DNA from: Amphiscolops sp. MND2022 | Taxonomy: Eukaryota | Reading direction: 5' to 3' | DNA: 64,000 bases | Assembly (NCBI GenBank): GCA_964187785.1 | Contig: CAXLNC010001087.1 | Location: 186,001 to 250,000 of the forward strand | Part shown: positions 10,401 through 32,038 of the stretch, piece by piece | Numbering within the stretch: the first letter of the stretch is position 1 | Layout of the letters: each line of letters opens with the position of its first letter | Notes under the pieces: generated by a model | Database searches by the model: none | What the model saw: only the letters and a program-made list of their open reading frames with translations | What the model was told of the DNA's origin: nothing | Translations under genes and position numbers: made by a program

Positions 10401-10868
10401 AATCGAAGCCAAAATAAAGTTTCCCTGAAGTCTAATGCATGTGCACAAGCTAAACGTTCAAATCCCCAAATGAATTTAGAACATCCCATTTCAAAATGAA
10501 AACAAATCAATCCTGTTTTTTGGTTTTTATTTCATGTTAAACGTCAAAAACCCGATCAGAAAAATAGAAAATTAGACACCGACAAAAATCGAAGCCAAAA
10601 TAATGTTTCCTTGAAGTCTCTTGCATGTGAAGAAGCTAAAATTTCAAATCCTCAAATGAATTTAGAACATGCCATTTCAAAATGAAGATAAATCAATTCG
10701 ATTTCTTGGTTTTATTTTATGTTGTACGTCAAAAACCCGATCAGAAAAATAGAAAAACAAACACGGACAAAAATCGAAGCCAAAATAAAGTTTCCCTGAA
10801 GTCTCTTGCATGTGGACAAGCTAAAAACTCAAATCCCCAAATTAATTTAGAACATGCCATTTCAAAAT
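7492..10868 (+). repeat. ~185-bp satellite, ~18 monomers, with higher-order structure (741-bp tetramers, one 556-bp trimer)
   Basis: The monomer gaacatgccatttcaaaataaagataaatcaatcc...aatcgaagccaaaataaagtttccctgaagtc recurs throughout. A diagnostic variant (spurious MKINQF ORF) occurs at 7903, 8644, 9200, 9941 and 10682, giving spacings of 741, 556, 741 and 741. Confidence 0.95.
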
Positions 10869-12131: not shown

Positions 12132-13047
12132 GACATTCTGACGGACCTGGAAAAGCACTTGGCATCACAAATGAAGCTCCTCAGATTGCCTGGTAAACAA
12201 GGTAAAGGAATTCCGGTGCTTCTCGATATAGCCTGCCAAAAGCTATTAAAGTTTCTCCTCGACGACGAAGACCTACAAAGCAATAAATTCTTATTTCAAA
12301 GTGGGCACAGACGACCCTACCAAAGTCACCATCTGCTGAATCAAATTACAAAAGAAGTCTCCCAGTTGGAAAAACCCGAAGTGTTAAGAGCAACAGCAAT
12401 GCGCAAGTACTGCGCCACAGCTCTTCAAATGATGGAACTCCCGAAGTATCAAAAATCGTGGGTCGCGGAGCACTTGGGCCACTCCCTGGGGATCCATGGG
12501 AAGTATTCTGTTATGCCTGTTCTGTATGCCTCTCGATTCTGTTGAAACTGCAAAAATAACGAAACTTTTGTACCTAATCGATCATTGTAAAATGAGTGAA
12601 GTGCGTGGCCTAAATTTAAACGAAGTGGATACCGTTATTAGCAGAGACAAAATACTTCAAAGTAGCGAAGAGAGTGACTATGTGGACCAATTGCCAGAAC
12701 TGTTTGACCGGGAAAACATGGATCGATGTTCCAAATATATTGATGATGAAGCCAACAGACCAGAAATAGTGCGCGGTTATTCCACAGTTGAGAAAGGAGA
12801 GCCCCTTGCCAGAGCCAGAAGGAAAGAAGGCAAAAGGTCATACTGGCCTCCCGACCAAGAGGCTAGAGTTATCGAGATTTTTCAGACCTTCATTGCCAGA
12901 CGACAATGCCCGAACAAAGTCCAATGTGAGAAATATTTGCATTTATTTCCTCATTGTCAAGGGAAGTACCAGCGGCTTAAAGAGAAAGTGAATAATTTGA
13001 TGTTAAAAGGGCAGCCCAGAGAGAAAAAAGAAACTTCCGATGAATGA
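12132..13047 (+). CDS. Exon 5: YR catalytic domain (GKQGK, ATAMRKY, LGH..HGKY) and C-terminal Myb/SANT-like helix-turn-helix
   Basis: LPGKQGKGIPVLL (Lys), LRATAMRKYCAT (HxxR equivalent), VAEHLGHSLGIHGKY (His, Tyr). A frameshift leads into MPLDSVETAKITKLL, then RSYWPPDQEARVIEIF...KVQCEKY...KYQRLKEKVNN. Confidence 0.8.
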
Positions 13048-13151
13048 ACGAATGACAGACCTTTAATTATTGGTATTTTTTTCATTGTTTTGAAAAGTGA
13101 CAGCATTTCATTTTTATTATTATGAAACAGGGGTATTTATTATCATTATTC

Positions 13152-13205
<54 letters not shown>
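13152..13205 (+). repeat. (ATT)n microsatellite tract A
   Basis: Pure att run preceded by degenerate units; abuts element E1. Confidence 0.97.
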
Positions 13206-15698
13206 GTATTATAGTACTCTCTATGGCTAAAAGCCCGTTAATAATAGGACTTTTTATGTCATACCCAGACTCTCTATGGCCAACCTCAAAAATTCAAACT
13301 TCTCAAAAAACTCTTCAAAACTTTTTCAGGACAATCAAATGGTTGGAAAACATTCTCTGTGGTGATAAGATTACAATTGCAAATAATTCCAAGTGTCTCA
13401 TTTCAGATTAGAATGGTTTTCAGGTCCCAAAACATTTTCAGCTTCTATTTCGGGATTATACGACTCTCTATGGTCATCCAGCGAGAGTATCAGATGCGAA
13501 TCGTAATGTGTGACGTAATTCAAGTGTGGTCTCATTTCTCATTGGCCAATCATTTTATGAATGATCAGAAGTTGTTCTCAGTCTATACACGCACTGTAGC
13601 AGTGTTACTGGCGTTTTACACCGCTTGCACTAAAATAACTATTAGACGTTCATTGTCAATCTAGTTACTATTAGACACTCTTTGTTATAAATTTGGTTAC
13701 ACATAGACACGTGGTGGTTTAAGAGATTTCGGCAGCTCAAATTTCAATTCAACAAAGTAACTGAAAACTCTGATTGAGGCAATTCAAAACTATCCAGTAA
13801 TTACCAGCAGTAAAAGGGTCACTCATTATCTATGTAGAGACTAAAATTTTACAGTAGCGTAAACGTTAACCATCTTACAATAAACTTTTTTGAAAACAAA
13901 CGCAGTATCTTCCTCATTTAATTTCAATTCGTTTACAATGTCTTTTACGTTGCCTTTCGACAGCTTTGCTCTCTTTGAAGCCACCATTCGACAAGCTCTT
14001 TTATACTCTTTTTCTAACGGGAAAGACTTTCGGTTACTGAATTTCAAAAGTTTTCTGGCTATTTCATCATACAATTCCTCATTTTTCATTCTTGTTTTGA
14101 TGTTTGTATCTTCAATTTTGACCACTTTTGCATTTCGCGGGGGTAGAAATTCTTTGTCGTTACCATCACCGTCGCTTTCAGAGTCGTCGTCTGTTTCGGA
14201 TTCGCTATTTTCATTCTTTTTTGAGACTTTTTTGACTTTTTTGCGTTTTTCACTTTTTTGACCAGTTTTCACTTGAACATTTTTGGACAAACTTTTTGAC
14301 GAACAAGCAATTAATTCATCTTGAGGCCCATCCTCATCTTCAGTAGTGTCAGCAGCTTCCTCAGAAGCAGTACTGGGAACTGTCAAAGTATAAATAATAA
14401 ACTGCTGAAAGTATATTGGCGATCTTTTTTCAAATCATCAAGACATTTGCCAACTAGTTCAGGTCTTTTCATGCTGTGTGTGCCTCTGAAAAACTTTGCA
14501 ATTGCGTCGAATTGGAAATTTGCAAGTGGTCGTTTCATTTTTTCAATGCAATAATCGCGATATTTGTTTAGCAATTCGCCGCCCCTCTCGGATAGGACAC
14601 CTTTTTCTTTCATGTATTTGATGATTTCGGCTGGAAATGTATTGCAATTGTCTCGGGTGATGTTTTTGACTGAATGTTGAGGGAATTGACTCAAATGTCG
14701 CTGACGATGAGTGAATCGGTATACACATTCTGCGCATTCGTACACGGGACTTTTGGCATTTTTAGTTGAAAACACACTCAAAATGAAACGTAGGTGGACA
14801 CCGGTCCATTTGTGGCTCTTTACTAAATGCTGACGAAGGAATTTGACTTTTTTTGGACAGATAGGACACTGAATTTCACCAGATTGTTTTGGTTTGACTC
14901 CGCGTTTCACTGTTTTTGGCTCGACCGGTATCGTTGACGGCCCTTGTTCGGTCTCAGACACTTCGGGGGGTATTTCGTCATGACTATGGGTGGCTTCAAA
15001 GGGGGAATTGTCTGTCTTTTTAGGGGAAAACAGGAGAAAATCATTTTCCACGATTTCGTCGAGCTCTGGCATGATGGACTGTGATCCAGCTAAATCGTCT
15101 ATTATAGCCTGTGTAAGAGGCCCTGGTGTTGGTAAACCGAAACTCGAGTCTAAATTTAAGTTTTCTGGACTAGATGCTGGCAATTCTGATTGTTCGAAGT
15201 CTTTTTCTGAAGCATTTTTAATTCTTCTACCGGATCTAAGTACTCTAGCCATTACGTGTCTATATGTAACCAAAAGGTGATCAAAGAGTGATTATAGGAA
15301 ATTTAAAATTTTTGAAAAGAAATTGGAAGCAAGCGCAATGATTCGTATTGAATGCAGTGTTGAAATGAATGTTATGTCATCCGGATGCTTTGTATAAATT
15401 ACAGTTGTCTGATTACGTCACACAGGTATTGGTATTGGCGGGAATGGTGATTACGTCACTAGCCAGAGAGTGTCTAATTACGTCATCGTTATTTACCAGT
15501 TCCGCCTATGCGACGAGGCTGCGCAAGTGCATGCGGCAATCATTTCCGGAATGCTTTTGAGTGAATACCTTTCCGTAATGCTGGAAGTTTCCTACATGTG
15601 ACTTTTTGTAAAACCACTCTATGGCTAACCTGAATTCAGGGCTTGGACACTCTATGGCCAGAAAATTGGCCGTTGCTTAAACCATAGAGCCTCCCACA
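13206..15698 (-). mobile_element. E1: internally deleted twin of YR element E2
   Basis: Appears identical to 15745-19072 (offset 2539, then 3374) except that ~850 bp of the catalytic domain is replaced by the filler ataaataataaact at ~14385-14398. Confidence 0.92.
13841..15252 (-). pseudogene. Deleted ZnF-YR ORF lacking the catalytic domain
   Basis: ORFs 14383-15273 and 13841-14386 match the N- and C-terminal parts of the 755-aa ORF in E2. Confidence 0.9.

Positions 15699-15744
<46 letters not shown>
15699..15744 (+). repeat. (ATT)n tract B
   Basis: Pure att run between E1 and E2. Confidence 0.97.
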
Positions 15745-18700
15745 GTATTATAGTACTCTCTATGGCTAAAAGCCCGTTAATAATAGGACTTTTTATGTCA
15801 TACCCAGACTCTCTATGGCCAACCTCAAAAATTCAAACTTCTCAAAAAACTCTTCAAAACTTTTTCAGGACAATCAAATGGTTGGAAAACATTCTCTGTG
15901 GTGATAAGATTACAATTGCAAATAATTCCAAGTGTCTCATTTCAGATTAGAATGGTTTTCAGGTCCCAAAACATTTTCAGCTTCTATTTCGGGATTATAC
16001 GACTCTCTATGGTCATCCAGCGAGAGTATCAGATGCGAATCGTAATGTGTGACGTAATTCAAGTGTGGTCTCATTTCTCATTGGCCAATCATTTTATGAA
16101 TGATCAGAAGTTGTTCTCAGTCTATACACGCACTGTAGCAGTGTTACTGGCGTTTTACACCGCTTGCACTAAAATAACTATTAGACGTTCATTGTCAATC
16201 TAGTTACTATTAGACACTCTTTGTTATAAATTTGGTTACACATAGACACGTGGTGGTTTAAGAGATTTCGGCAGCTCAAATTTCAATTCAACAAAGTAAC
16301 TGAAAACTCTGATTGAGGCAATTCAAAACTATCCAGTAATTACCAGCAGTAAAAGGGTCACTCATTATCTATGTAGAGACTAAAATTTTACAGTAGCGTA
16401 AACGTTAACCATCTTACAATAAACTTTTTTGAAAACAAACGCAGTATCTTCCTCATTTAATTTCAATTCGTTTACAATGTCTTTTACGTTGCCTTTCGAC
16501 AGCTTTGCTCTCTTTGAAGCCACCATTCGACAAGCTCTTTTATACTCTTTTTCTAACGGGAAAGACTTTCGGTTACTGAATTTCAAAAGTTTTCTGGCTA
16601 TTTCATCATACAATTCCTCATTTTTCATTCTTGTTTTGATGTTTGTATCTTCAATTTTGACCACTTTTGCATTTCGCGGGGGTAGAAATTCTTTGTCGTT
16701 ACCATCACCGTCGCTTTCAGAGTCGTCGTCTGTTTCGGATTCGCTATTTTCATTCTTTTTTGAGACTTTTTTGACTTTTTTGCGTTTTTCACTTTTTTGA
16801 CCAGTTTTCACTTGAACATTTTTGGACAAACTTTTTGACGAACAAGCAATTAATTCATCTTGAGGCCCATCCTCATCTTCAGTAGTGTCAGCAGCTTCCT
16901 CAGAAGCAGTACTGGGAACTGTCAAAGTTATTTCTGAAGGTTTTTCGGCGCGTTTTTTTCGAAATTGAACCCGGATATCATTTGTGGCATCGAATAGGTT
17001 TTGTAGCTCCATATCTGTTGGGGGCACTACATAGTGTTTCTCACGCGTCTTTTCAGAGTGTGCCGAATTAGCCTCGAATATTTTGCGGAGATTTGCCGGA
17101 ATTTTTTGCTTGTTTTTCTCATAAAAAGTCTCCCAAACTTTTCTGCATGAATTCGGGTTGAATTTTTCGTCTTTTTTGCCAAATAAATTTTTCATTAGAC
17201 GGCTGATTGTGGCCGATTGCGACGTGAATTCATTATCATCGTGGCCGGGAAAAATTGTTGTCGGTTTGATACCAAATTTTTCTTCGTATTCGCTGTGAAG
17301 TTCTTGCAAAACTTTCTTTTCAAAAGCTGTTATATAGGCGTAGTTGGTGAATAAACTTCCGGTTTTATGGTCATTAGAGCGAATAAAGGTCCCTGGTTCA
17401 TATGCGTCAAGTTGTTCGGTCGTAAAAGACAACAAAATACCAACACGGCAATTGGCTCGTGAGTGAATCTGGAATAATACCAGCGACAATTTTTCGAATA
17501 CCGTCAATGTATGCCATGGCGAGTCTAATTCTAATTTGTTTTCAATGAAATTTTCCACCTTGTCTTGGATCTCACAAAGCGATTCCATGGTGGGAATTTG
17601 TGCAAATCGTTCCTGTTTTCGCTTTGACTGTTCTTTAAGGCAGTCCTTAGAAGTCTCACTGAGCCACAAATTGATCGAGTCGTCAAAACTGACCTTGTTT
17701 ATTCGATAAGATTTTTGATAGCCGGCATTCATCCACTTTATGAACTGTTTGATGTCAAAACAAATTTTTCGTACTGAGCTGAAAGTATATTGGCGATCTT
17801 TTTTCAAATCATCAAGACATTTGCCAACTAGTTCAGGTCTTTTCATGCTGTGTGTGCCTCTGAAAAACTTTGCAATTGCGTCGAATTGGAAATTTGCAAG
17901 TGGTCGTTTCATTTTTTCAATGCAATAATCGCGATATTTGTTTAGCAATTCGCCGCCCCTCTCGGATAGGACACCTTTTTCTTTCATGTATTTGATGATT
18001 TCGGCTGGAAATGTATTGCAATTGTCTCGGGTGATGTTTTTGACTGAATGTTGAGGGAATTGACTCAAATGTCGCTGACGATGAGTGAATCGGTATACAC
18101 ATTCTGCGCATTCGTACACGGGACTTTTGGCATTTTTAGTTGAAAACACACTCAAAATGAAACGTAGGTGGACACCGGTCCATTTGTGGCTCTTTACTAA
18201 ATGCTGACGAAGGAATTTGACTTTTTTTGGACAGATAGGACACTGAATTTCACCAGATTGTTTTGGTTTGACTCCGCGTTTCACTGTTTTTGGCTCGACC
18301 GGTATCGTTGACGGCCCTTGTTCGGTCTCAGACACTTCGGGGGGTATTTCGTCATGACTATGGGTGGCTTCAAAGGGGGAATTGTCTGTCTTTTTAGGGG
18401 AAAACAGGAGAAAATCATTTTCCACGATTTCGTCGAGCTCTGGCATGATGGACTGTGATCCAGCTAAATCGTCTATTATAGCCTGTGTAAGAGGCCCTGG
18501 TGTTGGTAAACCGAAACTCGAGTCTAAATTTAAGTTTTCTGGACTAGATGCTGGCAATTCTGATTGTTCGAAGTCTTTTTCTGAAGCATTTTTAATTCTT
18601 CTACCGGATCTAAGTACTCTAGCCATTACGTGTCTATATGTAACCAAAAGGTGATCAAAGAGTGATTATAGGAAATTTAAAATTTTTGAAAAGAAATTGG

Positions 18701-19072
18701 AAGCAAGCGCAATGATTCGTATTGAATGCAGTGTTGAAATGAATGTTATGTCATCCGGATGCTTTGTATAAATTACAGTTGTCTGATTACGTCACACAGG
18801 TATTGGTATTGGCGGGAATGGTGATTACGTCACTAGCCAGAGAGTGTCTAATTACGTCATCGTTATTTACCAGTTCCGCCTATGCGACGAGGCTGCGCAA
18901 GTGCATGCGGCAATCATTTCCGGAATGCTTTTGAGTGAATACCTTTCCGTAATGCTGGAAGTTTCCTACATGTGACTTTTTGTAAAACCACTCTATGGCT
19001 AACCTGAATTCAGGGCTTGGACACTCTATGGCCAGAAAATTGGCCGTTGCTTAAACCATAGAGCCTCCCACA
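15745..19072 (-). mobile_element. E2: apparently autonomous 3.3-kb YR (Crypton-like) DNA transposon bounded by (ATT)n
   Basis: Single intact YR ORF. The left end has iterated ctctctatgg; the right end has two ctctatgg plus one opposing ccatagag. (ATT)n lies on both sides. No RT. Confidence 0.85.
16380..18626 (-). CDS. ~748-aa protein: acidic N-terminus, two C2H2-like zinc fingers, SAM-like core-binding region, tyrosine recombinase catalytic domain, charged C-terminus
   Basis: First ATG at 18626. CPICPKKVKFLRQHLVKSH and CAECVYRFTHRQRH; QYTFSSVRKICFDIKQFIKW; ANCRVG (Arg), DHKTG (Lys), NPNSCRKVWET (HxxR equivalent), SAHSEKTREKHY (His, Tyr). Confidence 0.88.
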   Translation of the reverse strand: MARVLRSGRRIKNASEKDFEQSELPASSPENLNLDSSFGLPTPGPLTQAIIDDLAGSQSIMPELDEIVENDFLLFSPKKTDNSPFEATHSHDEIPPEVSETEQGPSTIPVEPKTVKRGVKPKQSGEIQCPICPKKVKFLRQHLVKSHKWTGVHLRFILSVFSTKNAKSPVYECAECVYRFTHRQRHLSQFPQHSVKNITRDNCNTFPAEIIKYMKEKGVLSERGGELLNKYRDYCIEKMKRPLANFQFDAIAKFFRGTHSMKRPELVGKCLDDLKKDRQYTFSSVRKICFDIKQFIKWMNAGYQKSYRINKVSFDDSINLWLSETSKDCLKEQSKRKQERFAQIPTMESLCEIQDKVENFIENKLELDSPWHTLTVFEKLSLVLFQIHSRANCRVGILLSFTTEQLDAYEPGTFIRSNDHKTGSLFTNYAYITAFEKKVLQELHSEYEEKFGIKPTTIFPGHDDNEFTSQSATISRLMKNLFGKKDEKFNPNSCRKVWETFYEKNKQKIPANLRKIFEANSAHSEKTREKHYVVPPTDMELQNLFDATNDIRVQFRKKRAEKPSEITLTVPSTASEEAADTTEDEDGPQDELIACSSKSLSKNVQVKTGQKSEKRKKVKKVSKKNENSESETDDDSESDGDGNDKEFLPPRNAKVVKIEDTNIKTRMKNEELYDEIARKLLKFSNRKSFPLEKEYKRACRMVASKRAKLSKGNVKDIVNELKLNEEDTAFVFKKVYCKMVNVYATVKF

Positions 19073-19134
<62 letters not shown>
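19073..19134 (+). repeat. (ATT)n tract C
   Basis: Pure att run between E2 and E3. Confidence 0.97.
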
Positions 19135-19137
<3 letters not shown>

Positions 19138-22100
19138 ACGCAGTGCCAAATAACCCCACAGTTGTATTTTAGCGCATACCAAATACCACCAGCTGAGGGG
19201 TTATTTGGGGAGTAGTTTGGCATGACCCTGAATTTCCACTTCCACGGGTCGTAGGAAAGCGAAATTTAGGGAAGCAGCTGAAAACCCTTGAAAAAGACAT
19301 TTGACAAACTTTGAACGAAGTTGATCGCGTAATTCCTTAATTATTAAGGTCCCTTTCCCAATACCAAATAACCCCCTTTCAGATAATCTCAAGGACAAAC
19401 TACACCCTGAGTATTATTGCATTATTATGGCGCCTCGTCGTTATCTAAGACAGTCAAGCCAATTACCACACGCAATATTGGTATCCAAGAAGTTCTACGT
19501 AGTACCGTATTTATACTGCTTGAAGTTTTCCACCAACGCAAGAAATGCCAAATTACTCCTTTTTAGTCCTATTTTGATGAACAATATTTCGTGTAATTTC
19601 ACTTTAAATCTGATACCGAAGTGCAAAAAGTTGTTCAACTATTATTCAGGTATGCAATTCGATCGGTTCCTGAAGCAACAGTGTCCTTGTTTTCAATGAA
19701 CCTCATACCTTTTTACATACTATAACATCTGATCAATTGATTAAACTTCATTCGCTTTACACTCCCTAAAAGCCAGAGGTGAGCTTTTAGTCACGCGAAA
19801 GCAGAAACATACATTTCGGTGGTAGTCTTTTTAACAATTGTTTATCACGTCTTTTACTTCAAAAGTGTAACTAAATTTCTGCATTCCTTCGTTTCTGTTA
19901 AATTTCGTATCGTTACTGTTAATTCCCCCACAGTAAGCGAGCGGGGGAATTAAATCGGGGGGGGGGGGAAATAACCGAAGATATCCAAACTTTCTCGTAA
20001 ACAATTTTTCTTTTTTGTTATTTGAAACTAATTAAGGAACTAAAGGACTTAAAGGAATTAAGGAACAAGTTGGTCGTATTAATCTGCAAAGTTTGTCAAA
20101 GATAATCTCGATTCTTGTGATCGCAAATCAATTCGTCAAATTTTTGTGGTGGTGCTATAAACTCTTTGTTTCATAGAACCAACCGCAAAATCCAGTCAGA
20201 ATAGAAATTCATTGATAACTTAAAAAATGATGTTGCTTTTCAGAAATTGTAGAAAGTTTCAGATTCAATTGTAATAATTTTCTCTTGAGCTATCCAATTC
20301 TGCAACCTAATTATGTGATGATCACATATCGATGCTAACAGCCAATAAAATGGCGGTGTTTCCATACTGGTTCATACAGTGTATTTGTTTTACATGTACT
20401 AACTCTAACTGCAACTCTGGGGGTTTGAATAGGCACCTGCAACACTATTCAGCTGTAAAATTATTTTTGTATTTTTGCTCCTCTTTGTATTTGGTACGTA
20501 ATAATTTCGCAGAAAGCCATTTTGACGTTACTCACGCTAGAAAGCTGGAAGACTTTGTGACGTTAGTTTGTCAAATTTTCTATAACTATTGAATTAGTTG
20601 GCTTATTTCCATCATTCAATGAAGTTTCTCTTCCGCGTGACAAACGTCAAAAATTAGTTGGTTCAGGAATTTGAATTTCAAATACAAAACAACGTATAAA
20701 CTACCTAACTAAAACATTTCTATAGTTTAATCCTTTCCAAATAGTAGTTGTATCAAGTTGAATTTTTATTTTTCCAAGAATAATTACCTGTCGTATTGCA
20801 GCATTCATTTGGGAGCATATACTGTTTTCCACATTAGGTAAAAAAGATCAAAAATTCTGTCGAGATGAATACGAAAAATCAACCTCTATTTTGAATACGA
20901 GAGGACAAATAACTCCTATACTTATTAGCAGCGGACAAATAGCCCCCTATTTTAAAAATACCAGAGGACAAGTAACTCCAATATTTAATATCAGAGGACA
21001 AATAACCCCCGCATCAAAAATGCCAGAGGACAAGTAACTCCGTTTTTAATATCAGAGGACAAATAACCCCCGCATTAAGAACCAAAGGACAAACAACTCC
21101 AATATTTAATATCAGAGGACAATTTTTGAAGACATGCACAACTGCCTTTTCTTATTGGCCAATAGTTTCACCACTTAAATTCAGTTCAGCTTGTCAGTCG
21201 GGTGAAATGCATTTTAAATAAATAAATTTCACCGCAAACGATATCGCATAAGTCTTAATGAACCTTCCTGCGAGAAGATTGTAACCTGAATTGGGTTATA
21301 ATTATTTCTCCCAGGTACACCTTGTTTGTGATTCCCCCAACACGAAAGCACATTTTTATTGAGTGAATTCCCAAACAACATAGGAGCAAATAACTCAAAA
21401 CAAAATTTGTTTCAAATAACATAAAAATGAAATGAGTTTTACCAAACATAAAAATAGAATTGTTTACGAGAATGTTTTACTGGTCAAAATTATTCACAAT
21501 TCAAAAGATTCACTGGAAAATTTTTGAAAAAAACAAGTAAAATTTTGTGAATTTGATTATTGAAAAAGGTATTCGGTTTTATTTTTATGCTATTTGAAAT
21601 TAATTTCATTTTTATGTTATTTGAAAACAATTTTGTTCTTATGTTATTCGTTTTTATGTTTTTTGGTACTTAATCTTTTTATTGATGTTCATATGAGTGA
21701 AACACTTTTGAACAATAAAATCTTCTTCCGTGTTGAGGGGCTGGTTCGTAACAAAGTGTAACTCATGGGGAAACATGAATATTTTAACCAAACTCTTTGA
21801 TTCGATTTTTCTACACAACTGATAACTAAATCCAAAAATACTTTATAACAGTTTGTGTAAAAATTGAACTGAGGAAATATTTTGTTTTACATCCCTGGAA
21901 CTGACCACAAAGAAATGATTTTGCTTTTTTTGAAAAAATTGTGAAAAGTAACCCATTCATAGTTACGTTTCCCGTACTTGTTTCTCCAGAGTTTTCAATG
22001 ATAGTTGGTTTCAAGGTTATACTAACCTTCAATGTTATAACGTCTAATGAGCAAGGCCAAGTAATGCAAATTTTAGTAGCAAACTTAATTTTGCTAGCTG

Positions 22101-23812
22101 TTGGAAAGTTGTGAATGAGATGCAAACAACACTGCTAAACGTAGCAAGACTTTTTGACCATAGTCACGCTATAATGCAGAAACGGACTTTTTGAAACTGA
22201 ACATATGTAGATTTGTAGATTTGTAATTATGATTACCACTAGTTTTATGAGATTGCGCGTGACCAATGTCAAAAAAATACCAAATGCTAAATACGTGTGA
22301 TAAACCTCAAAAATGTAGTTTGGTCACTAACTGCACCTTTTTGAACTAGGGGGCTTAAAAGAATGGATCTTTAATCAATAATACAGAGAAATTCAGTTTA
22401 AATGTTTTTCGAGACTCCCAATTGAATGTATCATTGCATTTATGGTATCAACAAGTCATAAAGAAAGTTTCTCCGAACGAAAGCATTGAAAAAATGATAA
22501 TAATTGCCAAAATTGAATCAAACTTACACATCCTATTAGGCTGTCAATGGAAACCATTTTTGAATTCAAGTACTGATAATTAACCCCCCCCCCCCCCCCC
22601 GAATCAGAATCATATGTTCTTTCGTACATTTTATCAAGGATGCTAGTAAAATTCGAAGATGTTTCCCCATTCTAACAAGATCGGTGCAATAACAGTGGAT
22701 AAACCTACCTAACGAAGTGCTTATATCTATTTGTTTGTTTTGTTATATCCATAATTCTTGTTTACTTCGAATTAATCATTAGACTAGTTTAGTGAAAAAT
22801 TTTTTATGCTGTATCGCTGTCAATTTTCAATGAAGTTCGATTTTGGGTATGAATTGTATTGATACATATGGGGTAGGCACCATTCAATTTCCCAATAATT
22901 GAAGTACCTGTTTTGTTGTTTAAAAACAAAACGAAATTTGCCGGTACTTTTTAAAAAACGACATGTTCAAATGTGATTGGTTGCCGCATTCGCCAATGAT
23001 TTCACACTTCAACCCCCCCCCCCCCCACAACACGACCAAAGCACATTCGGGACAAATTCCGTAAAATAATTTTCATTTGCGGTTAAACATATATGCCCTT
23101 ATTTCATTTATTAATAATTTGTATCATTAATTGGAATAAAATCATTCACCTGTGAATGAATTTATTGTATCTAGGCTGAAATTGATTGTTAATTTCTGCG
23201 GCAGTATGAGTTCGAAGCAACATTTTCCGGACACAATGGTGCTCTAAAAAATTGTTTGATGGTCCCTATCAATATGCCCAGTCAAATTGTAATTTTGATT
23301 TGTATCCTGTTAAATTCCCCCCATCTGGCATAATGGCTCGAAAGTTTTTCCCCCATTAGGTTTCCAATGAATTTTTTGCAAAATTTATCTAAGGATTTTT
23401 TGTTAAAAGTTGCCAATTTTGTTCTCCTTGGGGAAAAGCTCGCTAAGGGAATTGTAGAAAAGGCCCAAAAACTCCTAGCAAATTTATCTCATGATTGTGA
23501 ATTTGCTAGTACTGAATTTCAGTGCCTATATCTAGATTCGTTATGTGGTAAAAAACTGGAGTTGTATGGCAACATATCAGTTTTACTAGCACTAGTAGTC
23601 TTTTTGCATTTCCAAGGGTTCAAATGGATTGCGGAAAACTGTCTCACGGGATATTCGCAAGGACGAACAGCCCCTTTGGAAGCTATCTACGCATACCAAA
23701 TAACCCTCTTAATACTTTAATACTAAAAGTGTAACTTGGTACTGCTATTAACTCAGTGGTGTCATTTGTCCTGCGCAGTGTAATATTGAGTGTAGTTTGG
23801 CATTGCGATTAC
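19135..23812. mobile_element. E3: 4.7-kb non-coding element with imperfect TIRs, bounded by (ATT)n
   Basis: Left end aacgcagtgccaaata vs reverse complement of right end atcgcaatgccaaact. The caaataaccc motif is iterated near both ends (19146, ~19200 inverted, 19366, 23698). Confidence 0.65.
20900..21122 (+). repeat. ~30-bp minisatellite (8 agaggacaa(a/g)taac(t/c)cc heads)
   Basis: Heads recur about every 30-31 bp with alternating spacer variants. Confidence 0.85.

Positions 23813-23879
<67 letters not shown>
23813..23879 (+). repeat. (ATT)n tract D
   Basis: Pure att run between E3 and E4. Confidence 0.97.
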
Positions 23880-23880
<1 letters not shown>

Positions 23881-26152
23881 ACCATTAGACCATCTATGTA
23901 CATAGAAAACGCAAAATTGGTGTGTCATAGGAAGTCTGAACTCCAAAATACGGGTGTACATAGAGAGTTTCTCAAGTTGGGAAGTTATATTCACACTGCA
24001 GCAAAAACAAATATAAACCATCAAATAGTGCCCAAATACAAGGCTGCATGCACAGAGTTGGAAATTTCCGTCCGCTGGTTAATGTGATAACCAACCACCG
24101 CTCAAGACACTCTATGACGTCGTTTTTTCACGCCGGAAACGCGTTTGCGCTGCCATTCTGTCTACCGCTCAACGAATTGCGTAATCAGGTATGTTTGTCT
24201 TCATTCCGAGACCTTAAACGAGCACTTTTAAATTTTAAGTTTTTTTGATATCTTTTCTTCAACGGTTTTTATTTTCACATTTCTACTAATGTATCAAAAA
24301 TTCAACAAGTGCAATTATTAGACAATTAATGGCACTTATATTACAAATAGGCCTCAGATCGAAAAACCAGCGTTATAAGAGGAATCTAAACTAGATGTGA
24401 GTTCAGAAAACATCGTTGTTGCCCCGGACACTCCACTGATTGGATTTCCAAGCCTTCGACCTGCGACACAGGCACTAATTGACAACATTTGTGAGTCAAA
24501 CCCTTGTTCACTGCAGGTGTTGGATTTACTCGACTCGGAAATTGAGGCAACTCCATCGTCAAAACTGGTTAATAATATTAGCTAAGGGCATGTAACGCAA
24601 ACTCCATCATTAAGCAAAACTTCTGTGCCAACTCCCAAAGCTGAACAAGCTGACAGGAAAAGAAAAAGAAGTAATGAAACCAAAACAGTAATTTTTTAAA
24701 CAGCGTCCATTTTGACTTTACATGCCGAGTTTCTTTGCCAGCACATCAGGGTGCCCGAAATTGCAGATTATGTTGTGAAAGGGAATCGTGTCGTAATGAA
24801 TTGCACCTTCAGTATGACGGGAACGCTATGTTATGACATCAAATTGTTTCTTTGTATTGTGAATGTTAATCATATAGCGTCTTACATGTTCAACAGAAAC
24901 TAGAAATTACACGGTACTACGGTTAATGCGAAGGAAACCCCCAGGACTGGTCAGACAGAGAGTCGGTCGAGGAATAAGATGAGATTAACTTTGATTCTCC
25001 TTATGTCTTTTTTTGGCGAAACTCGGTACTTACTCGACATTTAATCGACGAGTGATAATTATTGGACTCGCCTTGACGTAATCTGTCTTCTCAAAGGGCG
25101 TTTGGCTTGATGCCATTTCATATTTTTCCAAGAGCCAACTGCCGTTTTGGCATGCTAATCAATTTCGCAATTAGTCAGTTCAGTAAAAACATAACTGGAC
25201 ACTTCATCGGAAGTTTTTAAAAGAAATCAGGAAGCATTTACATTCGCGTTTGCTACATGACACACAATTAAAAATTGGTTGAATACGAGAAAAACATGCT
25301 TAAAAAACTAAAAACAGAACATTACTTGCACAATACGATGCCTAAACGTTGTTTAATTGATGTTAGTAAGCTTCATTGGGTTACAAATGCAAATAAAAAA
25401 GAGTTATAGCAAGAAATACCCTTGTCACGTAAGGACTGAAAATTAGTGCTCAAAATATTTCAAACCCAAACTTGAAAATGACACTCTCATTTTGGACTCA
25501 AAAGATACATTTCGTTTAGGTTTCACCCAATGTAAACATTTGTATACGTTTTGTTGCTCTATTTTAAACCGTTAAAAAGAAACAGAGTCAGAAAAAGAGC
25601 AATCGCAAACAAATGGGGGCTATTTTATTCATTAATTGTCCTATAATATTAGTTTTTGAGTCATATATTGTCTGATAATCAAGAACCAAAATCATCGAGA
25701 GTCTAATAGTTAAAAGGTTGAGACCGTCACCAGGCCATAAGTGTAGCATAAGAATTGATTAGAAACATTGTAGAATGCTGCTAGAACTGCTGTCTAGTAT
25801 GCGGAATGAAATGAACAACGAATGAGAAGCTGTGACGTCAGAATAAGATTAGGTCACGTGACCTCCGATAATCCTCGCTGGGCGGACAAAAAGCATCCAA
25901 TAATACCAAATAACACGTGATAAATGTTTTCAGCCTTGAAACAATTGTTAATCAAGAGTTAGACATTTGGAAAATATTGCAATTGTAATCTTATCACACC
26001 CAACTATGTTGGCATGTATTTTTTGAGAAACGAAACTCTTGCTGTTTTTAAATATTTGCGAGTTAATTTTTTCCGCTAGGACATAGAGAGTCTGGCATGT
26101 CACAGAGAGTCTGAATAATATTAAAAATTTGTACATAGAGAGTCTAATAAAA

Positions 26153-26153
<1 letters not shown>
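23880..26153 (+). mobile_element. E4: decayed relative of E2 in the opposite orientation
   Basis: Imperfect TIR ttagaccatctatgtaca / tgtacatagagagtctaa. The right end shares the gtgataagattacaattgcaa block with the E2 left end (inverted). Relic ORF 24397-24585 resembles the E2 N-terminus. Confidence 0.75.

Positions 26154-26196
<43 letters not shown>
26154..26196 (+). repeat. (ATT)n tract E
   Basis: Pure att run between E4 and E5. Confidence 0.97.
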
Positions 26197-28999
26197 GATT
26201 CTCAGACAATCAATGGCCATGGAAACAGCCTTTCTGAGGCGCCAGAGAGAGTCCGGCCCCTCAAAACGGAAAGCCAACGGGAGTCCTTAAGGATTGGATA
26301 GCTCTGTGCTCGTGACAATAACGTCACTGATTGCGTTTTAATTCGCTTCCAAAAGAAACGCTGCATACACGTGCGCAGCTTAATGGTTTCAGCGGTTTTG
26401 AAAATAACGAGTTTTGAAATTGGACTCTCTCTGGCGTTTCATGTTGCCATGTAATGTTTGTTTTCGGAGAAAATTAAGTGCTGGTCACAACTGCTAAAAC
26501 TGTTTAAAGAAAGTTGGTAGTGAATACAAAAAACACAAATGGCTATTGACAACATTTTTGAATGATTTCGATTTTGTTTTGGAGAAATACTAAAAATGCC
26601 TATAATCACTATTAAGTTTAGATAGTAATCAATAGACTTTGTATGGCTAGTGGAACTATATCATTGTTATCTGTTCGTTGATGTCGAAAATTGCTATCTA
26701 AAACAATCAATAAAAGCCCAATGTTTTAAATCCTCGCTTCCCCTAGTCTTTTAGCAGCTTTATAGATTTTTTCGAAAGGGTTAGAAGTGTTCCCAGACCT
26801 AACTATCAGATGTTTTGCGATGAATTTGCTGATCGCAAGACGGACACTGAAGTCGTTCAATTCAAGGTTAAATGCGTTGAAAATATGATGAATTTAGCGT
26901 TTAGATCAAGCGCCATCAACTCACCATCGAACCTGCAGCTTGCACAACAGTTCTGGTCACTGTAAGACTAAATATGAGAGAAAATTGGATTTTTCGGACA
27001 AAAAATTAGTTTGTGATTATAAAGACTCTCGTCGGCTACCCACTAATCAAACCCCGTTTTTCAACGAACGAAAATGGTGACTAAAAACAATCACAGTTTC
27101 GCAGAAAATTAGTGTTCGTATTTATTTCAACATTCTCAACCACATTTTAGAAGTCGCAAGAAGGCTGAAGTTGTTTGAAGCACAATAGATTACTTAAACT
27201 AGACGCCCTCAATGCGCCGGGATAATTTCCGCCTTCAATTGACTAACAATAGACGCTTAATCGAAAATTTACCTCCTTGGCAAAAAAACAATTTACTTCG
27301 GATGTAAATTCAATACCCGGATACAGCGCAATACTTTCGAACCTACGCTTCCTCTTTAGTAATACACAATTGTCTTCGGATATACCGTCAAAAGTTCAGA
27401 TATAGCGCAATTTTTCGAACGTCTGCCCCCTCCTTAGTAAAATGCAATATAGTTCGGATATAACGTCAAAAGATAGAATGGCTTATTACTTCACTTCGGA
27501 TATTACGAGGGAGAGTTCAATGAAATCAAAGAGGAAACCCTTGGAGACAAACAAATTTTCGAAAAAAACACAGCGCCGAAAAAAATGAAATCGGGATCCT
27601 TTAGTCTCGTCTGGTTTTGTAGGTTACGCTGAAAAGGTAAACATCAAAAGGGGACTCTTTGCAGTAAGTTTCCGCTGGCTGGGTTTGGCTTTAGTAGTTT
27701 TAGTCTGTGGTCTGGAGAAAAAAGATCTCTGTAAGAATCGGGCAATTTTTTTACACAAAAAGTGCTGACTAAAAACATTGTTTGTTCGCTCTTCTAATCT
27801 AATGAATCGCTTCAAATTAGTTGATCTTTGTTCGCACGGTCAACTGCATAACAAACGTAACAAACGAAGACACCTCTACTGTGACTCGATGTGTTCATTG
27901 CATATTGAAGACAATCAGACCAGAGACGGTCTCACCATGCGTTGAATATAAAAAATTTTTTAACATCTTCAAAATCAAAAAATTTGAATAAAAACTGTTT
28001 TCGGATACATTTCAGCATTACCGTCGCTCGTTTAAATTATAATAGGTAACCAAAAGGCCTAAACGAAAGATAAAATGTTGTTTTCAGGTTTTGCAATAGT
28101 GCACATTCATATGCGCACATTAACTTTCCGAGCAGGTTTCGGCTAGAAAAAGATGTAATAAACAATATTCAGTGTTTGTATCCCCTTGCCAGAAGAGCGA
28201 AGGTGATTTTTTTAAGTATAATTTTGTCCAAATTTGGTTCCGTGACTTTTTTATTCCTCATTCAATTTTGATGTCACAAGATTTTTTTTTTGATTTGTTC
28301 AAGTTAAAACTTCGTGGAGTGCTGACATGTCTACTTTCGAGAAATAAAATGGTTTGCCTGAAAACTATTTCCAGTTATACTATCCAGCCCAAAAAAGAAA
28401 ATGAGCATATCACACCTCTCGAAGAAGAGTTACGCACTTGTTTTTTTTATTTTGGCGACATTTAAAATGCATGTATAGCCAAAAAGTGTCTATTTATTTC
28501 GGCAATTTCCCATAGAGCGTCTATATATAACTGGTTTTACAGAACGAGTCCAATAATATCGTTTTTGGTGACTTTGAGATGCAAGCTAATTCGGTAAAAA
28601 CCAAGCAAACACGAGTGTAAGAATGTCCAAGCAAGTCGCACTTCGTATGCCATGCGACAGCCAATCAAAACACAAGCGCAATATTGCTTTGAAGTTCGCG
28701 CCATACATCAGTCCTGTTGTTACGCTTGTGTGGTATAGAGAGTCCTATTATAATTTTCTTTCCTGCTGAAAATGTTTGCATCCAAATCACCACTTTCTGG
28801 AGCCACGATCCATCTGAAATCATTTGCAATTGTAAACTTATCAATACCAACAACATATTCAAGCAATTGCCGTAACGTGAAACAACCATTTGGCTGATTT
28901 TGGTTCGATCAAAAAACGCAATGTACCAGAGAGAGTCTGAGGCGTTCCATAGCGAGTCCAAAAATAACTGTTTTGGCGCCATAGAGAGTCTGAGAATCC
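26197..28999. mobile_element. E5: 2.8-kb non-autonomous element of the same motif family
   Basis: TIR gattctcagac...gtctgagaatc (exact 11 bp, extending imperfectly to ~21 bp). Iterated ccatagagagtc/ccagagagagtc motifs near both ends. Confidence 0.75.

Positions 29000-29039
<40 letters not shown>
29000..29039 (+). repeat. (ATT)n tract F
   Basis: Pure att run between E5 and E6. Confidence 0.97.
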
Positions 29040-29041
<2 letters not shown>

Positions 29042-31642
29042 TTATACTACTCTCTATGGCAAAAAATCGATAATTATACTACTCTCTATAGCACCACAAA
29101 TACTCTCTGTGGTTCCAGCGAATTTTCGATGAAGTCAAATACTGCAAAGAAGCAATAATTAATTACTACAAAAGCCCAAAAACGCTTTCACCAATAGCAA
29201 GAACAATTTTTCATATTTTTCTGTTCGAGTCATGACGTTTTAAAACGGTTTTCAGACGCCCAAACATTTTCGATGTACCTTTTGTGAACTATCAGACTCG
29301 CTATGTCTAGCAAGCGGAACTGTCGGACGCGAATTGTAAACAAAATGGGAACACAAAATCGAACTAAACTCTCATTGGCTAATCGATATATCGTTGAAAG
29401 CAACTTCTCTCAACACTATTCCGATCGTGTGGTGGCCGTACAAGCTTGATATGCATCTACAAATATTATTAGACTCTCAGTGTAGAAAATTGAATTTAGG
29501 TTTATTATAAGACTTCCGTTGGGTAAATTGAAGTTACTATTGGAATTTTGTTGGCAAAGGTGATGAGTTTCCAACTACTCAAATCATCTTTTACTTTCAA
29601 ATTGATAGCTGAAACTTCAGCGATAGCTACAAATTATTATAGCCAAATATAATTCTGCCCAAATTATAACTAAACTGTTTCAAACTTCGTAACTGACAAA
29701 GCCAACAATAGCTTCAAAGAAATTGTTTATAAAAAGTTGAACTTCAATATTTTCAATTGAGCCAAAAATTGACATTTTATCTCTATTGTCTGCTTTTGTG
29801 AGTTCAAATTTCAATAACGCAATAATTCCCCAACCTGATTTTTTGAGTTTTCGAGAACGAGTATCGAGTTTTTTGATGAATTTCATTCTTTTTTGCGCAA
29901 AGTGACCAAACTTATCTTCTAGTTCATTTTGCGATTTCAGTCTCGTTTCGACGATATTGGGTAATTTCGTTGCATGGGGAGGTTGATACACGGTGTCTAA
30001 GTCAGTTGCCACAGCTCTAGAAGTTCGTTTTTGATTTAAGTCTATGTTTTCAGCTTTTTTCGTCTTTTTTTTTATTTCTATTGAAAATGTCTTGGTTCTC
30101 CTCAGAATTCTTTGACAACAAAACAATAGGCTGCAGATCTATTGAGGCGCTTCGAGATGAATGTTTGTTGTCTCAGATGCATATCTGACGCGTTTCTGCA
30201 AAAAAACACACTTTCCCGAGTTGACAAAAGTAATATAACGACGTTTTTTGTGAAATTTTGGACTATATAATTTCGGCATAAACACCAAACTGCTGATGTA
30301 TTCCAGCTAGTTCGAGCAAATAAAAGCGTCAATGATGTATATAATAAAACTCCCTAATTGAGGAATTTATCACAGCTTTCTAATCAGTAGTTTGCTTGCG
30401 ACAGTTTCGAGAAATCAACCGTCAAAGTATCTTCAGATTTGTAGCTAATGCCACTGTGTGTCTCATAAATATTGATCAGCACAAAAACCGAAAAACTGAT
30501 TTTTCCTAACAATTCGAGAAAATAAAAGCGCCAATGATGTAGTATAATGAAGCTCCTCAATTGGGAAATTTATCACAGCGTTCTATCAGTAGTTTGCTTG
30601 CGACAGTTTCTAGAAATCAACCGCAGCTACTGCCACAGTGTGTCTAATAAAAATTGATCAGCACAAAAACCGAAATGTGATTATTTTCCAACATTTCGAG
30701 AAAATAAAAGCCCCATTGATGTAGTATAATGAAGCTCCTGATTTGCAAAATTTATCACAGCGTTCGTTCAATAGTTTGTTTGCGACAGTTTATAGAAATC
30801 GGGGGTCAAAGTTTGCTCAGATTTGTTGCTTATGCCACTGGAAGTCTGATAAAAAATTGATCATAATAAAAGTCATAAAGTGACAATACTTCATTTTGAG
30901 CCAGTCGATCAGTCTGGTTTTTTGAACAGGGTCTCACTGAGTTGTGGGAAATCATTTTCAATGATTGTTTTTTAGGATTTGTTCCGGATTCTGAGAACAA
31001 AAACAATTTTTCCTTTTTAGGTCTTTCCTCACGATTTCGATATTAAGTTTTTGAGGTTGAATTTTATTCGTTTGCTTGCTTTGTGGAAATAATTGGTGGT
31101 ATCGAACGGAAAGTCATTCCAACGTTCAACTCAATGGGATAAAAGGTGTCATCTGAACCCTCTTCGTTAACGATTTTAGTCCCAGTTTTGTCATCAGCAC
31201 ACCAATCTAAGCGCTTTTGCCATGGGAAGTCCTATTGAAATTGATGTTGGTGTTGTGAGTAATTATGGTCGAATCACTATTTTGATCAAATTTGTTTCAA
31301 AACGCTTGAAGAAGTTTAAATATACAACTGTTATGTGATCAGAACAATAAAAACAATTCTACAAAGTATTGAAATGACATCAGAACCCCATTGAACGAAT
31401 AATCCTGGCCTGAATACTTATGACGTCACATGCCATAGAGTGTATAATTACGTAATGGTTATTCCTTTGTTACGCTGATAGCAGCGAGCTGCGCATATGC
31501 ATGCACTCTTAATTTTGGTAGGTAGTTAAATTGGTAATACTGCCGCTATCGTGGAAAATTCCTATAAAAGCAAATGTCCAAAACCACCTATGGCCAAGGG
31601 TAAATCGGCTCGCGGACTCTCTATGGTTCCAAAATTCTCGGT
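29040..31642 (-). mobile_element. E6: decayed relative of E2 in the same orientation; right end runs into a gap
   Basis: Left end has tactctctatggc, tactctctatagc and tactctctgtgg. Right end aaaaccacctatggcc...ggactctctatggttcc parallels the E2 right end. Relic ORF 29680-30126 resembles the E2 C-terminus. Confidence 0.7.
30319..30860 (+). repeat. Three diverged tandem copies of a ~190-bp unit inside E6
   Basis: aataaaagc..aatgatgta.tataat.aa.ctcc...tttatcacagc...gcgacagttt.agaaatc recurs at ~30319, 30521 and 30703. Confidence 0.8.
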
Positions 31643-31784
31643 NNNNNNNNNNNNNNNNNNNNNNNNNNNNNNNNNNNNNNNNNNNNNNNNNNNNNNNNNN
31701 NNNNNNNNNNNNNNNNNNNNNNNNNNNNNNNNNNNNNNNNNNNNNNNNNNNNNNNNNNNNNNNNNNNNNNNNNNNNNNNNNNNN

Positions 31785-32038
31785 GTACTTGTTGGTACAC
31801 TGTGTGTGTACGTATATATTCTTGTATAAATATATGTAATTATTAGTATTTATACATATGTAAATATAAATTTAGCTCCAAGCTGATTCAAAGTAATAGT
31901 TTATAATAGCAATAAATTAGTTAGTTGTTTGTTAGTTATTTCACTTGCCTTTTTCTGTTTCGGTCTAATTCCAATTTCCTTCTTCGTAGACCGCGCTTGT
32001 TGTGTGACAGGTTTCACAGCTTAGCTGGGGCTGTGACA
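31785..32038 (-). repeat. 3' LTR (visible part) of Gypsy 1
   Basis: Matches 46143-46392 apart from a few substitutions and a 4-nt indel; begins TGTCACAG on the minus strand. Confidence 0.9.

What the first reader, a model, noticed from the sequence alone, without database searches (positions are those of the whole stretch)
13152..31642. Train of six different elements, each delimited by (ATT)n: microsatellite-targeted tyrosine-recombinase transposons
Seen: six pure (ATT)n tracts separate six 2.3-4.7-kb modules over 18.5 kb. Each module starts and ends at a tract with its own terminal structure, and the one intact gene is a YR. The SET-YR gene also ends just before the first tract. Inference: a family of YR DNA transposons integrates specifically into (ATT/TAA)n, leaving target on both sides so that insertions pile up as an ordered archive in a low-cost site. 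Unlike the classical Crypton description (short direct repeats, no TIRs), several modules have imperfect TIRs. Some Crypton subgroups may already be reported near microsatellites; I cannot verify this.
Basis: partly seen in the sequence, partly recalled or inferred. Interest (0 to 1): 0.88.

Follow-up and report, generated by a model that had tools for sequence, protein, structure and literature searches.

The report
Microsatellite-targeting tyrosine-recombinase transposon train
One (ATT)n microsatellite has been invaded repeatedly by small Crypton-like jumping genes that carry only a zinc-finger tyrosine recombinase and always sit between (ATT)n tracts; this habit is on record for one Crypton group (CryptonV) but has hardly been described.

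Summary
The six pure (ATT)n tracts are real. They are the only long ones in the window and all read ATT on the + strand. They bound six modules, with three corrections:
- Modules 1 and 2 are one family; module 1 is module 2 with an 849-nt deletion.
- The region's right edge is a masked N gap, not a tract.
- Module 3 shows no link to a recombinase.

Modules 1, 2, 4, 5 and 6 belong to four of five related families (A-E) and share an inverted CCATAGAG end motif with extra subterminal copies. The 748-aa ORF has no Pfam hit. It carries the R-K-R-H-Y pattern, and its model matches Cre, Xer and lambda Int.

The targeting idea holds. All 13 recombinase-type copies seen at seven loci of this genome lie between (ATT)n tracts, three of them solitary with unique flanks. 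Only module 6's gap-hidden right end could not be seen. Polarity relative to the tract is fixed per family. Copies 98-100% identical sit at different loci. A sister clade from another sample forms arrays between (TCA)n.

No empty site or circle junction was seen, so integration by recombination within the tract is inferred.

Kojima 2022 states that some CryptonV families insert specifically in microsatellites, so the kind is known. The scan has also noted such elements elsewhere in this genome. I rate this a new variant of a known kind.

The parts
13111..13212 (+). Tract 1: degenerate ATT-like run (13111-13151), then pure (TTA)18 at 13152-13205. This is the left edge of the train.
13206..15698 (-). 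M1: family A non-autonomous copy. It is M2 lacking residues 286-566 of the recombinase (849 nt replaced by 14 nt at 14390-14403).
15699..15743 (+). Tract 2, (ATT)15
15744..19072 (-). M2: autonomous family A element, 3.3 kb, with a single ORF. The outermost inverted motif copies are at 15755-15765 and 19056-19066, and further subterminal copies lie within about 300 nt of each end.
16380..18626 (-). 748-aa zinc-finger tyrosine recombinase. It has two C2H2-like fingers in the N-terminal third, then a core-binding and a catalytic domain with R394, K421, R495, H523 and Y532.
19073..19132 (+). Tract 3, (ATT)20
19133..23812 (.). M3: 4.7-kb non-coding element with its own roughly 20-nt TIR (core CGCARTGCCAAAYWAC at 19139 and 23807) and subterminal CCAAAYWAC-like copies. 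It has no recombinase relic and no CCATAGAGAGT motif, and it remains unclassified.
23813..23878 (+). Tract 4, (TTA)22
23879..26153 (+). M4: family B non-autonomous copy. Recombinase relics cover profile positions 10-141, 261-435 and 668-743; the catalytic C-terminal half is missing. It is 97.8% identical to L005:2683-4955.
26154..26195 (+). Tract 5, (TTA)14
26196..28999 (+). M5: carries family C ends (about 235 nt on the left and 340 nt on the right match L005, whose copy encodes P0008) with a 20-nt TIR abutting the tracts. The interior, 26436-28658, is unrelated and includes a very high-depth repeat at 27240-27633.
29000..29038 (+). Tract 6, (TTA)13
29039..31642 (-). M6: family D non-autonomous copy, 98.7% identical to L004:2913-5554. 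Only the C-terminal relic of the recombinase remains. It is cut by the N gap about 27 nt before the family's end.
31643..31784 (.). Masked or unassembled stretch. It hides the end of M6 and whatever joins it to the LTR, and it was not examined.
31785..32038 (.). LTR of a roughly 14.6-kb Gypsy element; its partner is at 46143-46392. The partner is preceded, 19 nt upstream, by a short (TAT)6 at 46106-46123.

Best explanation
The region is one ancestral (ATT)n microsatellite invaded repeatedly by small Crypton-like DNA transposons. Their only gene is a zinc-finger tyrosine recombinase.

Five related families (A-E) coexist in this genome; A, B, C and D are present here. They appear as one autonomous copy (M2) and four non-autonomous copies (M1, M4, M5, M6). 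An unclassified TIR element (M3) is lodged in the same tract.

Proposed mechanism (inferred):
- The element leaves as a circle in which its two ends are joined across a stretch of the repeat.
- The recombinase binds the inverted CCATAGAG-type end motifs. The subterminal direct copies act as accessory sites.
- It exchanges strands between the element's repeat and a genomic (ATT)n tract.
- The crossover lies in identical repeat units, so there is no target-site duplication and no footprint. The tract is split in two, and the element's polarity relative to the repeat strand is fixed.
- Each insertion creates two new targets, so trains build up. Recombination between any two tracts could also move several modules as one circle.

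Deleted copies that keep the ends are moved in trans.
For: Shown:
- Tracts and modules are as described.
- CCATAGAGAGT with up to 2 mismatches occurs 43 times against 10.7+-2.9 expected. Forty of these lie in 13216-31626, clustered at module ends, and none lies in M3.
- The ORF has the invariant R394/K421/R495/H523/Y532 pattern, with spacing as I recall it for Cre and XerD. Its AlphaFold model has pLDDT 80.5. The top PDB matches are Cre, XerA, XerH, Tn1549 Int and lambda Int. AlphaFold DB matches include eukaryotic 'Tyr recombinase domain' and 'Core-binding domain' proteins.
- The 3.3-kb element holds no other gene. No reverse transcriptase or DDE hit was found.
- At seven loci of the same assembly, 13 recombinase-type copies of five families all lie between ATT-type tracts of 15-186 nt. 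Only M6's gap-hidden right end could not be seen. Of 24 ATT-type runs of 12 nt or more in 154 kb, 21 abut an end motif, against 1.7% of random 30-nt windows.
- Solitary copies in L001, L003 and L021 have tracts on both sides and unique flanks.
- Polarity is constant within each family: A, D and E have AAT on the gene strand, B and C have TTA.
- Activity is recent. M1, M2 and L021 are 99.97-100% identical. M4 and M6 have 97.8-98.7% identical copies elsewhere.
- Selection acts on the ORF. dN/dS is 0.17 within family D. Between families synonymous sites are saturated (pS about 0.8), while pN is 0.25-0.43.
- The five ATT families form one clade with 100% support. Its sister clade, from another sample, forms tandem arrays separated by (TCA)n with 9-nt inverted repeats 0-3 nt from the tract.
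Against: - No empty site, excision footprint or circle junction was seen. Logan contigs break at every tract.
- The loci were found through the recombinase gene. They show that elements sit in tracts, not what share of tracts is occupied.
- The inverted CCATAGAG arms lie 9-15 nt from the tract in families A, D and E. The arms plus tract therefore do not form a classical 6-8-bp-spacer core site, and the point of strand exchange is unknown.
- The M4-M5 order recurs in L005, and an M3-like element next to family B recurs in L002. Some adjacency may come from duplication or co-mobilisation rather than separate insertions.
Confidence: 0.8

Rival explanations
1. The (ATT)n tracts are fixed terminal parts of the elements, which insert at essentially random sites. 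The microsatellite is cargo, not target.
For: Every copy carries the repeat, and no empty site was observed. The outer tracts of L002 and L005 are only 15-18 nt long.
Against: - Solitary copies have the repeat on both sides, with very unequal and copy-specific lengths, such as 105 and 186 nt in L003. A one-sided tail is therefore excluded.
- Within trains a single tract serves two different families.
- All six tracts of the window share one strand although the modules lie in both gene orientations.
- A tyrosine recombinase needs matching sequence at the crossover, so an element-borne repeat implies a repeat at the target. This rests on established knowledge of the enzyme class.
Confidence: 0.08
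2. The train grew mainly by unequal crossing-over or segmental duplication between microsatellites, not by serial transposition.
For: - M1 and M2 are adjacent, in the same orientation and identical apart from a deletion.
- The M4-to-M5 order recurs in L005, and an M3-like-to-B order recurs in L002.
- Tandem same-family arrays occur in L002, L006 and L018.
Against: - The window holds four recombinase families plus M3, in mixed orientation.
- Near-identical copies of A, M4 and M6 lie on other contigs with different flanks or neighbours.
- Solitary insertions exist.
- Unequal exchange could explain local duplication such as M1/M2, but not dispersal.
Confidence: 0.15
3. For M3 only: it is an unrelated cut-and-paste (DDE) transposon that happened to land in the tract, for example a PIF/Harbinger-type element that duplicates TTA/TAA.
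For: M3 has its own roughly 20-nt TIR next to the repeat (within 5 nt on the left, flush on the right). It has no CCATAGAG motif and no recombinase relic. A TTA/TAA target would be hidden inside an ATT repeat.
Against: - No transposase relic or autonomous partner was found.
- An M3-like element in L002 also ends flush at a (TTA)n tract.
- Its subterminal repeated motif resembles the layout of the recombinase elements.
Confidence: 0.4
4. The modules are (TAA)n-specific non-LTR retrotransposons (Dong/R4-like) or LINE/SINE copies with (TAA)n tails.
For: (TAA)n-specific LINEs exist; I recall Kojima & Fujiwara 2004, which PMC8869645 cites for sequence-specific LINEs. Microsatellite tails are common in LINEs.
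Against: No reverse transcriptase or endonuclease is present in any module. The repeat lies on both sides, inverted ends are present, and there is no 5' truncation pattern.
Confidence: 0.01

Closest known systems
CryptonV (Repbase group; Kapitonov & Jurka 2012, Repbase Reports 12:2034, as cited in PMC8869645)
   Same: A DNA transposon lineage that encodes a tyrosine recombinase, with some families inserted specifically in microsatellites.
   Different: - CryptonV was described from cnidarians. Earlier scan notes call this host an acoel, which I did not test.
- No CryptonV sequence or structural description was available to me; only three papers in the library mention the name.
- The present recombinase family has no Pfam hit. 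In the 30 of 135 HMMER-detectable clusters that I checked, every member comes from unannotated ENA, Logan or JGI assemblies.
Classical Cryptons (Goodwin 2003; Kojima & Jurka 2011, PMC3212892)
   Same: - A recombinase-only DNA transposon with no reverse transcriptase and no target-site duplication.
- Identical short sequence at both ends, taken as the recombination substrate.
- A circle-integration model.
- CryptonS ends share TATGG, and TATGG is part of the end motif here.
   Different: - Classical Cryptons are described as lacking TIRs and having 4-6-bp direct repeats.
- Here the direct repeat is a whole microsatellite of 15-186 nt.
- There are 8-20-nt imperfect TIRs plus several subterminal motif copies.
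- The protein carries N-terminal C2H2-like fingers instead of GCR1_C.
CryptonF-1_cRei of Chlamydomonas (PMC9977147)
   Same: An active Crypton with a defined short target (CAYCG) shared with its terminus. Excision leaves only the target, and target sites mediate rearrangements.
   Different: Its target is a 5-bp motif, not a repeat tract. It belongs to a different recombinase group and a different kingdom.
Telomere-repeat-specific tyrosine recombinases of endogenous nimaviruses (PMC10871703)
   Same: A recombinase with a C2H2 zinc-binding part and a SAM-like domain, associated with insertion into a simple repeat, (TAACC)n.
   Different: These are giant viral genomes with a pentanucleotide target. 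No sequence relationship was tested.
Tn916/Tn1549-type conjugative transposon integrases
   Same: Works like: a circular intermediate, end-binding plus accessory sites, and AT-rich targets. Tn1549 Int is among the fold matches.
   Different: These are bacterial, and their coupling sequences need not match. Here the exchanged sequence would always be identical repeat units.

Membership tests
Crypton superfamily (recombinase-only DNA transposons) | Encodes a tyrosine recombinase with the catalytic R..K..(H)xxR..H/W..Y set | tested here: met
   R394, K421, R495, H523 and Y532 are invariant or nearly invariant in 11 family members. The two-domain model matches Cre, Xer and Int. N492 stands where H usually stands.
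Crypton superfamily (recombinase-only DNA transposons) | No reverse transcriptase, no LTRs, no DDE transposase | tested here: met
   The 3.3-kb element has one ORF. There are no Pfam RT, rve or DDE hits.
Crypton superfamily (recombinase-only DNA transposons) | [quoted passage not shown] | tested here: not met
   Direct repeats are present, but as whole (ATT)n tracts. Imperfect TIRs of 8-20 nt occur in all five families.
Crypton superfamily (recombinase-only DNA transposons) | Recombinase groups by sequence with described Crypton clades | tested here: inconclusive
   No match to any Pfam model, including Phage_integrase and the Crypton-related DUF models, at E up to 1. Only fold-level and language-model resemblance to DUF3435 and eukaryotic recombinase clusters was found.
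CryptonV | Insertion specifically in microsatellites | tested here: met
   All 13 recombinase-type copies at seven loci lie between ATT-type tracts; one end, M6's right, is hidden by the gap. The sister clade lies between (TCA)n.
CryptonV | Recombinase clusters with the CryptonV consensus proteins of cnidarians | not testable with these tools
   The Repbase Report and its sequences are not in the library. None of the 30 related clusters I checked comes from an annotated proteome.
DIRS/Ngaro/PAT recombinase retrotransposons | Reverse transcriptase and RNase H beside the recombinase | tested here: not met
   None is present in any module.
R4/Dong-type (TAA)n-specific non-LTR retrotransposons | Reverse transcriptase plus restriction-like endonuclease, one-sided tail, 5' truncation | tested here: not met
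   No reverse transcriptase is present, the repeat lies on both sides, and inverted ends are present.
PIF/Harbinger (M3 only) | TIRs, 3-bp TWA duplication, DDE transposase in the autonomous partner | tested here: inconclusive
   A TIR is present. Any duplication would be indistinguishable inside an ATT repeat. No coding relic was found.

The most novel reading that the evidence does not exclude
A deep, so far unannotated clade of zinc-finger tyrosine-recombinase transposons has split into lineages that each specialise on one trinucleotide microsatellite and one strand polarity. The repeats seen are ATT here, ATC/TCA in the sister clade, and AGT in SET-fused relatives.

The C2H2 fingers might read the triplet repeat, and the catalytic domain would cross over inside it. 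Near-identical copies suggest that family A is still active. That would make it a tractable animal system for Crypton transposition, with multi-element circles as a way of moving whole trains.
Probability: 0.35. Interest if true: 0.75.

Novelty: new variant of a known kind. Interest (0 to 1): 0.55.

Why it matters
Cryptons are the least understood class of eukaryotic DNA transposons. The Chlamydomonas study says its observations of active Cryptons are, to its authors' knowledge, the first.

These elements offer several things to work with:
- a clean, repeated and harmless target;
- defined end motifs;
- autonomous and non-autonomous partners;
- near-identical copies that suggest current activity.

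Together these make the circle-integration model directly testable. They also show how several transposon families can share one 'safe' niche and turn a microsatellite into an 18-kb insertion stack. This bears on repeat annotation and on assembly breaks at microsatellites.

Because a 2012 Repbase Report already records microsatellite-specific Cryptons, the value lies in the anatomy and the breadth, not in the principle.

Tried and rejected
- Pfam scans of the 748-aa ORF and of all 11 family members gave no significant family. A profile search of PDB sequences gave only a low-complexity hit. The recombinase call therefore rests on motifs and the predicted fold.
- Laying Logan contigs of four runs on 23300-29200, to look for reads that skip a module or join ends, showed nothing. 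The contigs are cut at every tract and no tract-to-tract joints appear; only relative depth was informative.
- I tested whether the train sits in a Gypsy LTR whose partner LTR would be the empty site. The partner has (TAT)6 19 nt before the LTR match. The sequence left of tract 1 does not match the partner's upstream side, and the decisive stretch is masked. This is left open.
- A profile search of six-frame translations found no recombinase relic in M3, in M5 or in the SET/recombinase gene region.
- I looked for annotated or named relatives in 30 related clusters and found none.
- I looked for X, the repeat that flanks the trains of L002 and L004, as an unoccupied copy. Only the two occupied copies were available.
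- The non-LTR (Dong-like) and DIRS readings were rejected on coding content.
Full report
**Observation**

Tandem Repeats Finder and a regular-expression scan find six pure ATT-type tracts of 39-66 nt between 13152 and 29038. The only other such runs in the 64-kb window are 18 nt at 46106 and 12 nt at 60730. All six read ATT on the + strand. The stated right limit, 31642, is the first base before an N gap (31643-31784), not a tract.

**The modules**

- M1 and M2 are one family. They are 100% identical over 1184 and 1295 nt. M1 lacks 849 nt, replaced by a 14-nt filler, which removes residues 286-566 of the protein.
- M2 carries the only intact ORF, 748 aa from the first ATG.
- M4 holds relics of a related protein without its catalytic C-terminal half. 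M6 holds only a C-terminal relic.
- M5 has the ends of a further family, but its interior is unrelated.
- M3 has no long ORF, no relic and a different TIR.
- CCATAGAGAGT with up to 2 mismatches occurs 43 times against 10.7+-2.9 expected. Forty of these lie inside the train, clustered within about 300 nt of module ends, and none lies in M3.
- In gene orientation each recombinase-type element starts with an inverted copy (CTATGG) and ends with several direct copies. The outermost pair forms an imperfect TIR. The arms abut the tract to within 1 nt in family C, lie 5 nt from it in family B, and lie 9-15 nt from it in families A, D and E.

**The protein**

Pfam gives nothing for the ORF or its relatives. 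The alignment of 11 family members shows invariant or nearly invariant R394, K421, R495, H523 and Y532, with the spacing I recall for Cre and XerD. The N-terminal third has two C2H2-like fingers.

An AlphaFold model of residues 128-560 has a mean pLDDT of 80.5. Its best PDB matches are Cre, XerA, XerH, Tn1549 Int and lambda Int. E-values are modest (about 3e-3), and the best matches carry probabilities of 0.98-1.00. In AlphaFold DB it matches eukaryotic 'Tyr recombinase domain' and 'Core-binding domain' proteins, some of them fused to SET domains.

A profile search of 1.84 billion representatives finds only 135 relatives. All 30 clusters I looked up come from unannotated ENA, Logan or JGI assemblies.

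**Other loci**

The relatives at 39-62% identity all come from one ENA assembly (ERZ25074608). It also holds a copy 99.97% identical to M2, so it is the same organism.

| Locus | Content |
|---|---|
| L021 | Solitary family A copy between (AAT)30 and a 96-nt (TAA)n tract, with unique flanks |
| L001, L003 | Solitary family D copies; tracts of 48/57 nt and 105/186 nt |
| L004 | Non-autonomous D copy (98.7% identical to M6), then a family E element, with three tracts |
| L005 | Copy 97.8% identical to M4, then an ORF-bearing family C element (P0008, 509 aa) whose ends match M5, with three tracts |
| L002 | M3-like end, then two tandem family B elements, with tracts between |

That makes 13 recombinase-type copies of five families at seven loci. 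Every visible end lies at a tract; only M6's right end is hidden by the gap. Of 24 ATT-type runs in 154 kb, 21 abut an end motif, against 1.7% for random 30-nt windows. This sample was ascertained through the recombinase gene, so it says where elements sit, not how many tracts are occupied.

**Polarity**

Families A, D and E always have AAT on the gene strand. Families B and C always have TTA. This explains why modules of opposite gene orientation share tracts of one strand in the window. It is also what strand exchange inside an asymmetric repeat predicts.

**Age and selection**

Between families, synonymous sites are saturated (pS about 0.8) while pN is 0.25-0.43. Within family D, dN/dS is 0.17. 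The lineages are therefore old and kept functional, yet all keep the ATT association. Word depth of contigs from the same sample is 10-20 times higher over M4, and 5-15 times higher over M5, than over the adjacent part of M3. This fits multicopy families, although the tool warns that depth is not copy number.

**Relatives with other repeats**

In a tree of the proteins, the five ATT families form one clade with 100% support. Its sister clade (P0020, P0023; a different sample) forms tandem arrays of at least three copies. They are separated by (TCA)n tracts of 0.2-1.1 kb. In the P0020 array (L006), 9-nt inverted repeats lie 0-3 nt from the tract.

A more distant family, from marine metagenomes, starts at (TAA)n in six contigs. 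A SET-associated relative in this genome has (TAG)40 about 1.2 kb upstream of its SET ORF.

The recombinase piece left of tract 1 in the window (Phage_integrase, E = 2e-4) is not detectably related to this family. I found nothing that links that gene's ends to the tract.

**Mechanism**

Shown: the anatomy, the enzyme class, two-sided repeats at independent loci, fixed polarity, trans-mobilised deletion copies and very recent copies.

Inferred: excision as a circle carrying a stretch of the repeat; recombinase-mediated exchange with a genomic tract; no duplication and no footprint; trains arising because each insertion doubles the targets. The recurrence of the M4-M5 pair in L005, with one alignment running across the shared tract, fits either co-mobilisation as a two-module circle or duplication. 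The exact crossover point is unknown, because the conserved arms are too far apart to form a classical core site.

**Literature**

- Kojima & Jurka 2011 do not mention microsatellites. They describe Cryptons as lacking TIRs.
- Kojima 2022 states that some CryptonV families are inserted specifically in microsatellites, citing a 2012 Repbase Report on cnidarian elements. Only three papers in the library name CryptonV, and none describes it.
- Endogenous nimaviruses use a C2H2-bearing tyrosine recombinase associated with telomere-repeat insertion.
- Active Cryptons with a short shared target are documented in Chlamydomonas.

The principle is therefore known. This protein family, its end architecture, the multi-family occupation of one tract and the clade-specific choice of repeat are not described in anything I could read.

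**Earlier scan notes**

Earlier notes of this scan report the same kind of element elsewhere in this genome, between (GAT)n, (AGT)n, (TAA)n and (ATT)n tracts. They name the host as an acoel. I used these notes as leads only.

**Verdict**

I rate the finding a new variant of a known kind, of moderate interest.

Noticed in passing
window 27240-27633 (inside M5): Summed word depth of the sample's contigs reaches 22,000-125,000, against about 87 for neighbouring low-copy sequence, with many joints and loose ends. This is a very high-copy short repeat (78-nt period at 27320-27472) embedded in M5.
   Followed up: no
window 31785-32038 and 46143-46392; (TAT)6 at 46106-46123: These are LTRs of a roughly 14.6-kb Gypsy element. 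The train ends, through the N gap, next to one LTR. The other LTR has a short ATT-type run 19 nt before the LTR match. This may be the un-invaded counterpart of the target, but the masked stretch prevents a test.
   Followed up: partly
L002:8906-11400 and L004:2-2775: The same repeat (88-92% identical, with ORFs lacking clear Pfam hits) abuts the outermost tract of two different trains. Copies of one repeat that ends in (TAA)n have been invaded independently by different families.
   Followed up: partly
L006 and L018 (sample ERZ25067548): Both contigs holding the (TCA)n-separated tandem arrays are labelled circular by the assembler (suffix _c), at 0-2x coverage. This is probably a graph artefact of tandem repeats, but extrachromosomal multimers are not excluded.
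   Followed up: no
window 3196-3534 and 12159-12545; L017:5390-9198: The window has a SET-domain ORF and a Phage_integrase-like ORF about 9 kb apart, with a 185-nt satellite (7492-10868) between them. L017 has a SET ORF directly upstream of the 1065-aa recombinase P0042, with (TAG)40 1.2 kb upstream. The window's recombinase piece is not detectably related to P0042.
   Followed up: partly
L004:9595-14063: Genes with double-jelly-roll capsid-like, rve integrase and (faint) Pox_A32 ATPase hits, a Maverick/Polinton-like gene set, begin about 0.5 kb after the train's outer tract.
   Followed up: no
window 577-1368 and 7492-10868: Two blocks of satellite with the same 185-nt unit length (371-nt higher-order period), the second bordered by N gaps and an (ATAAT)n run at 6968-7091.
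   Followed up: no
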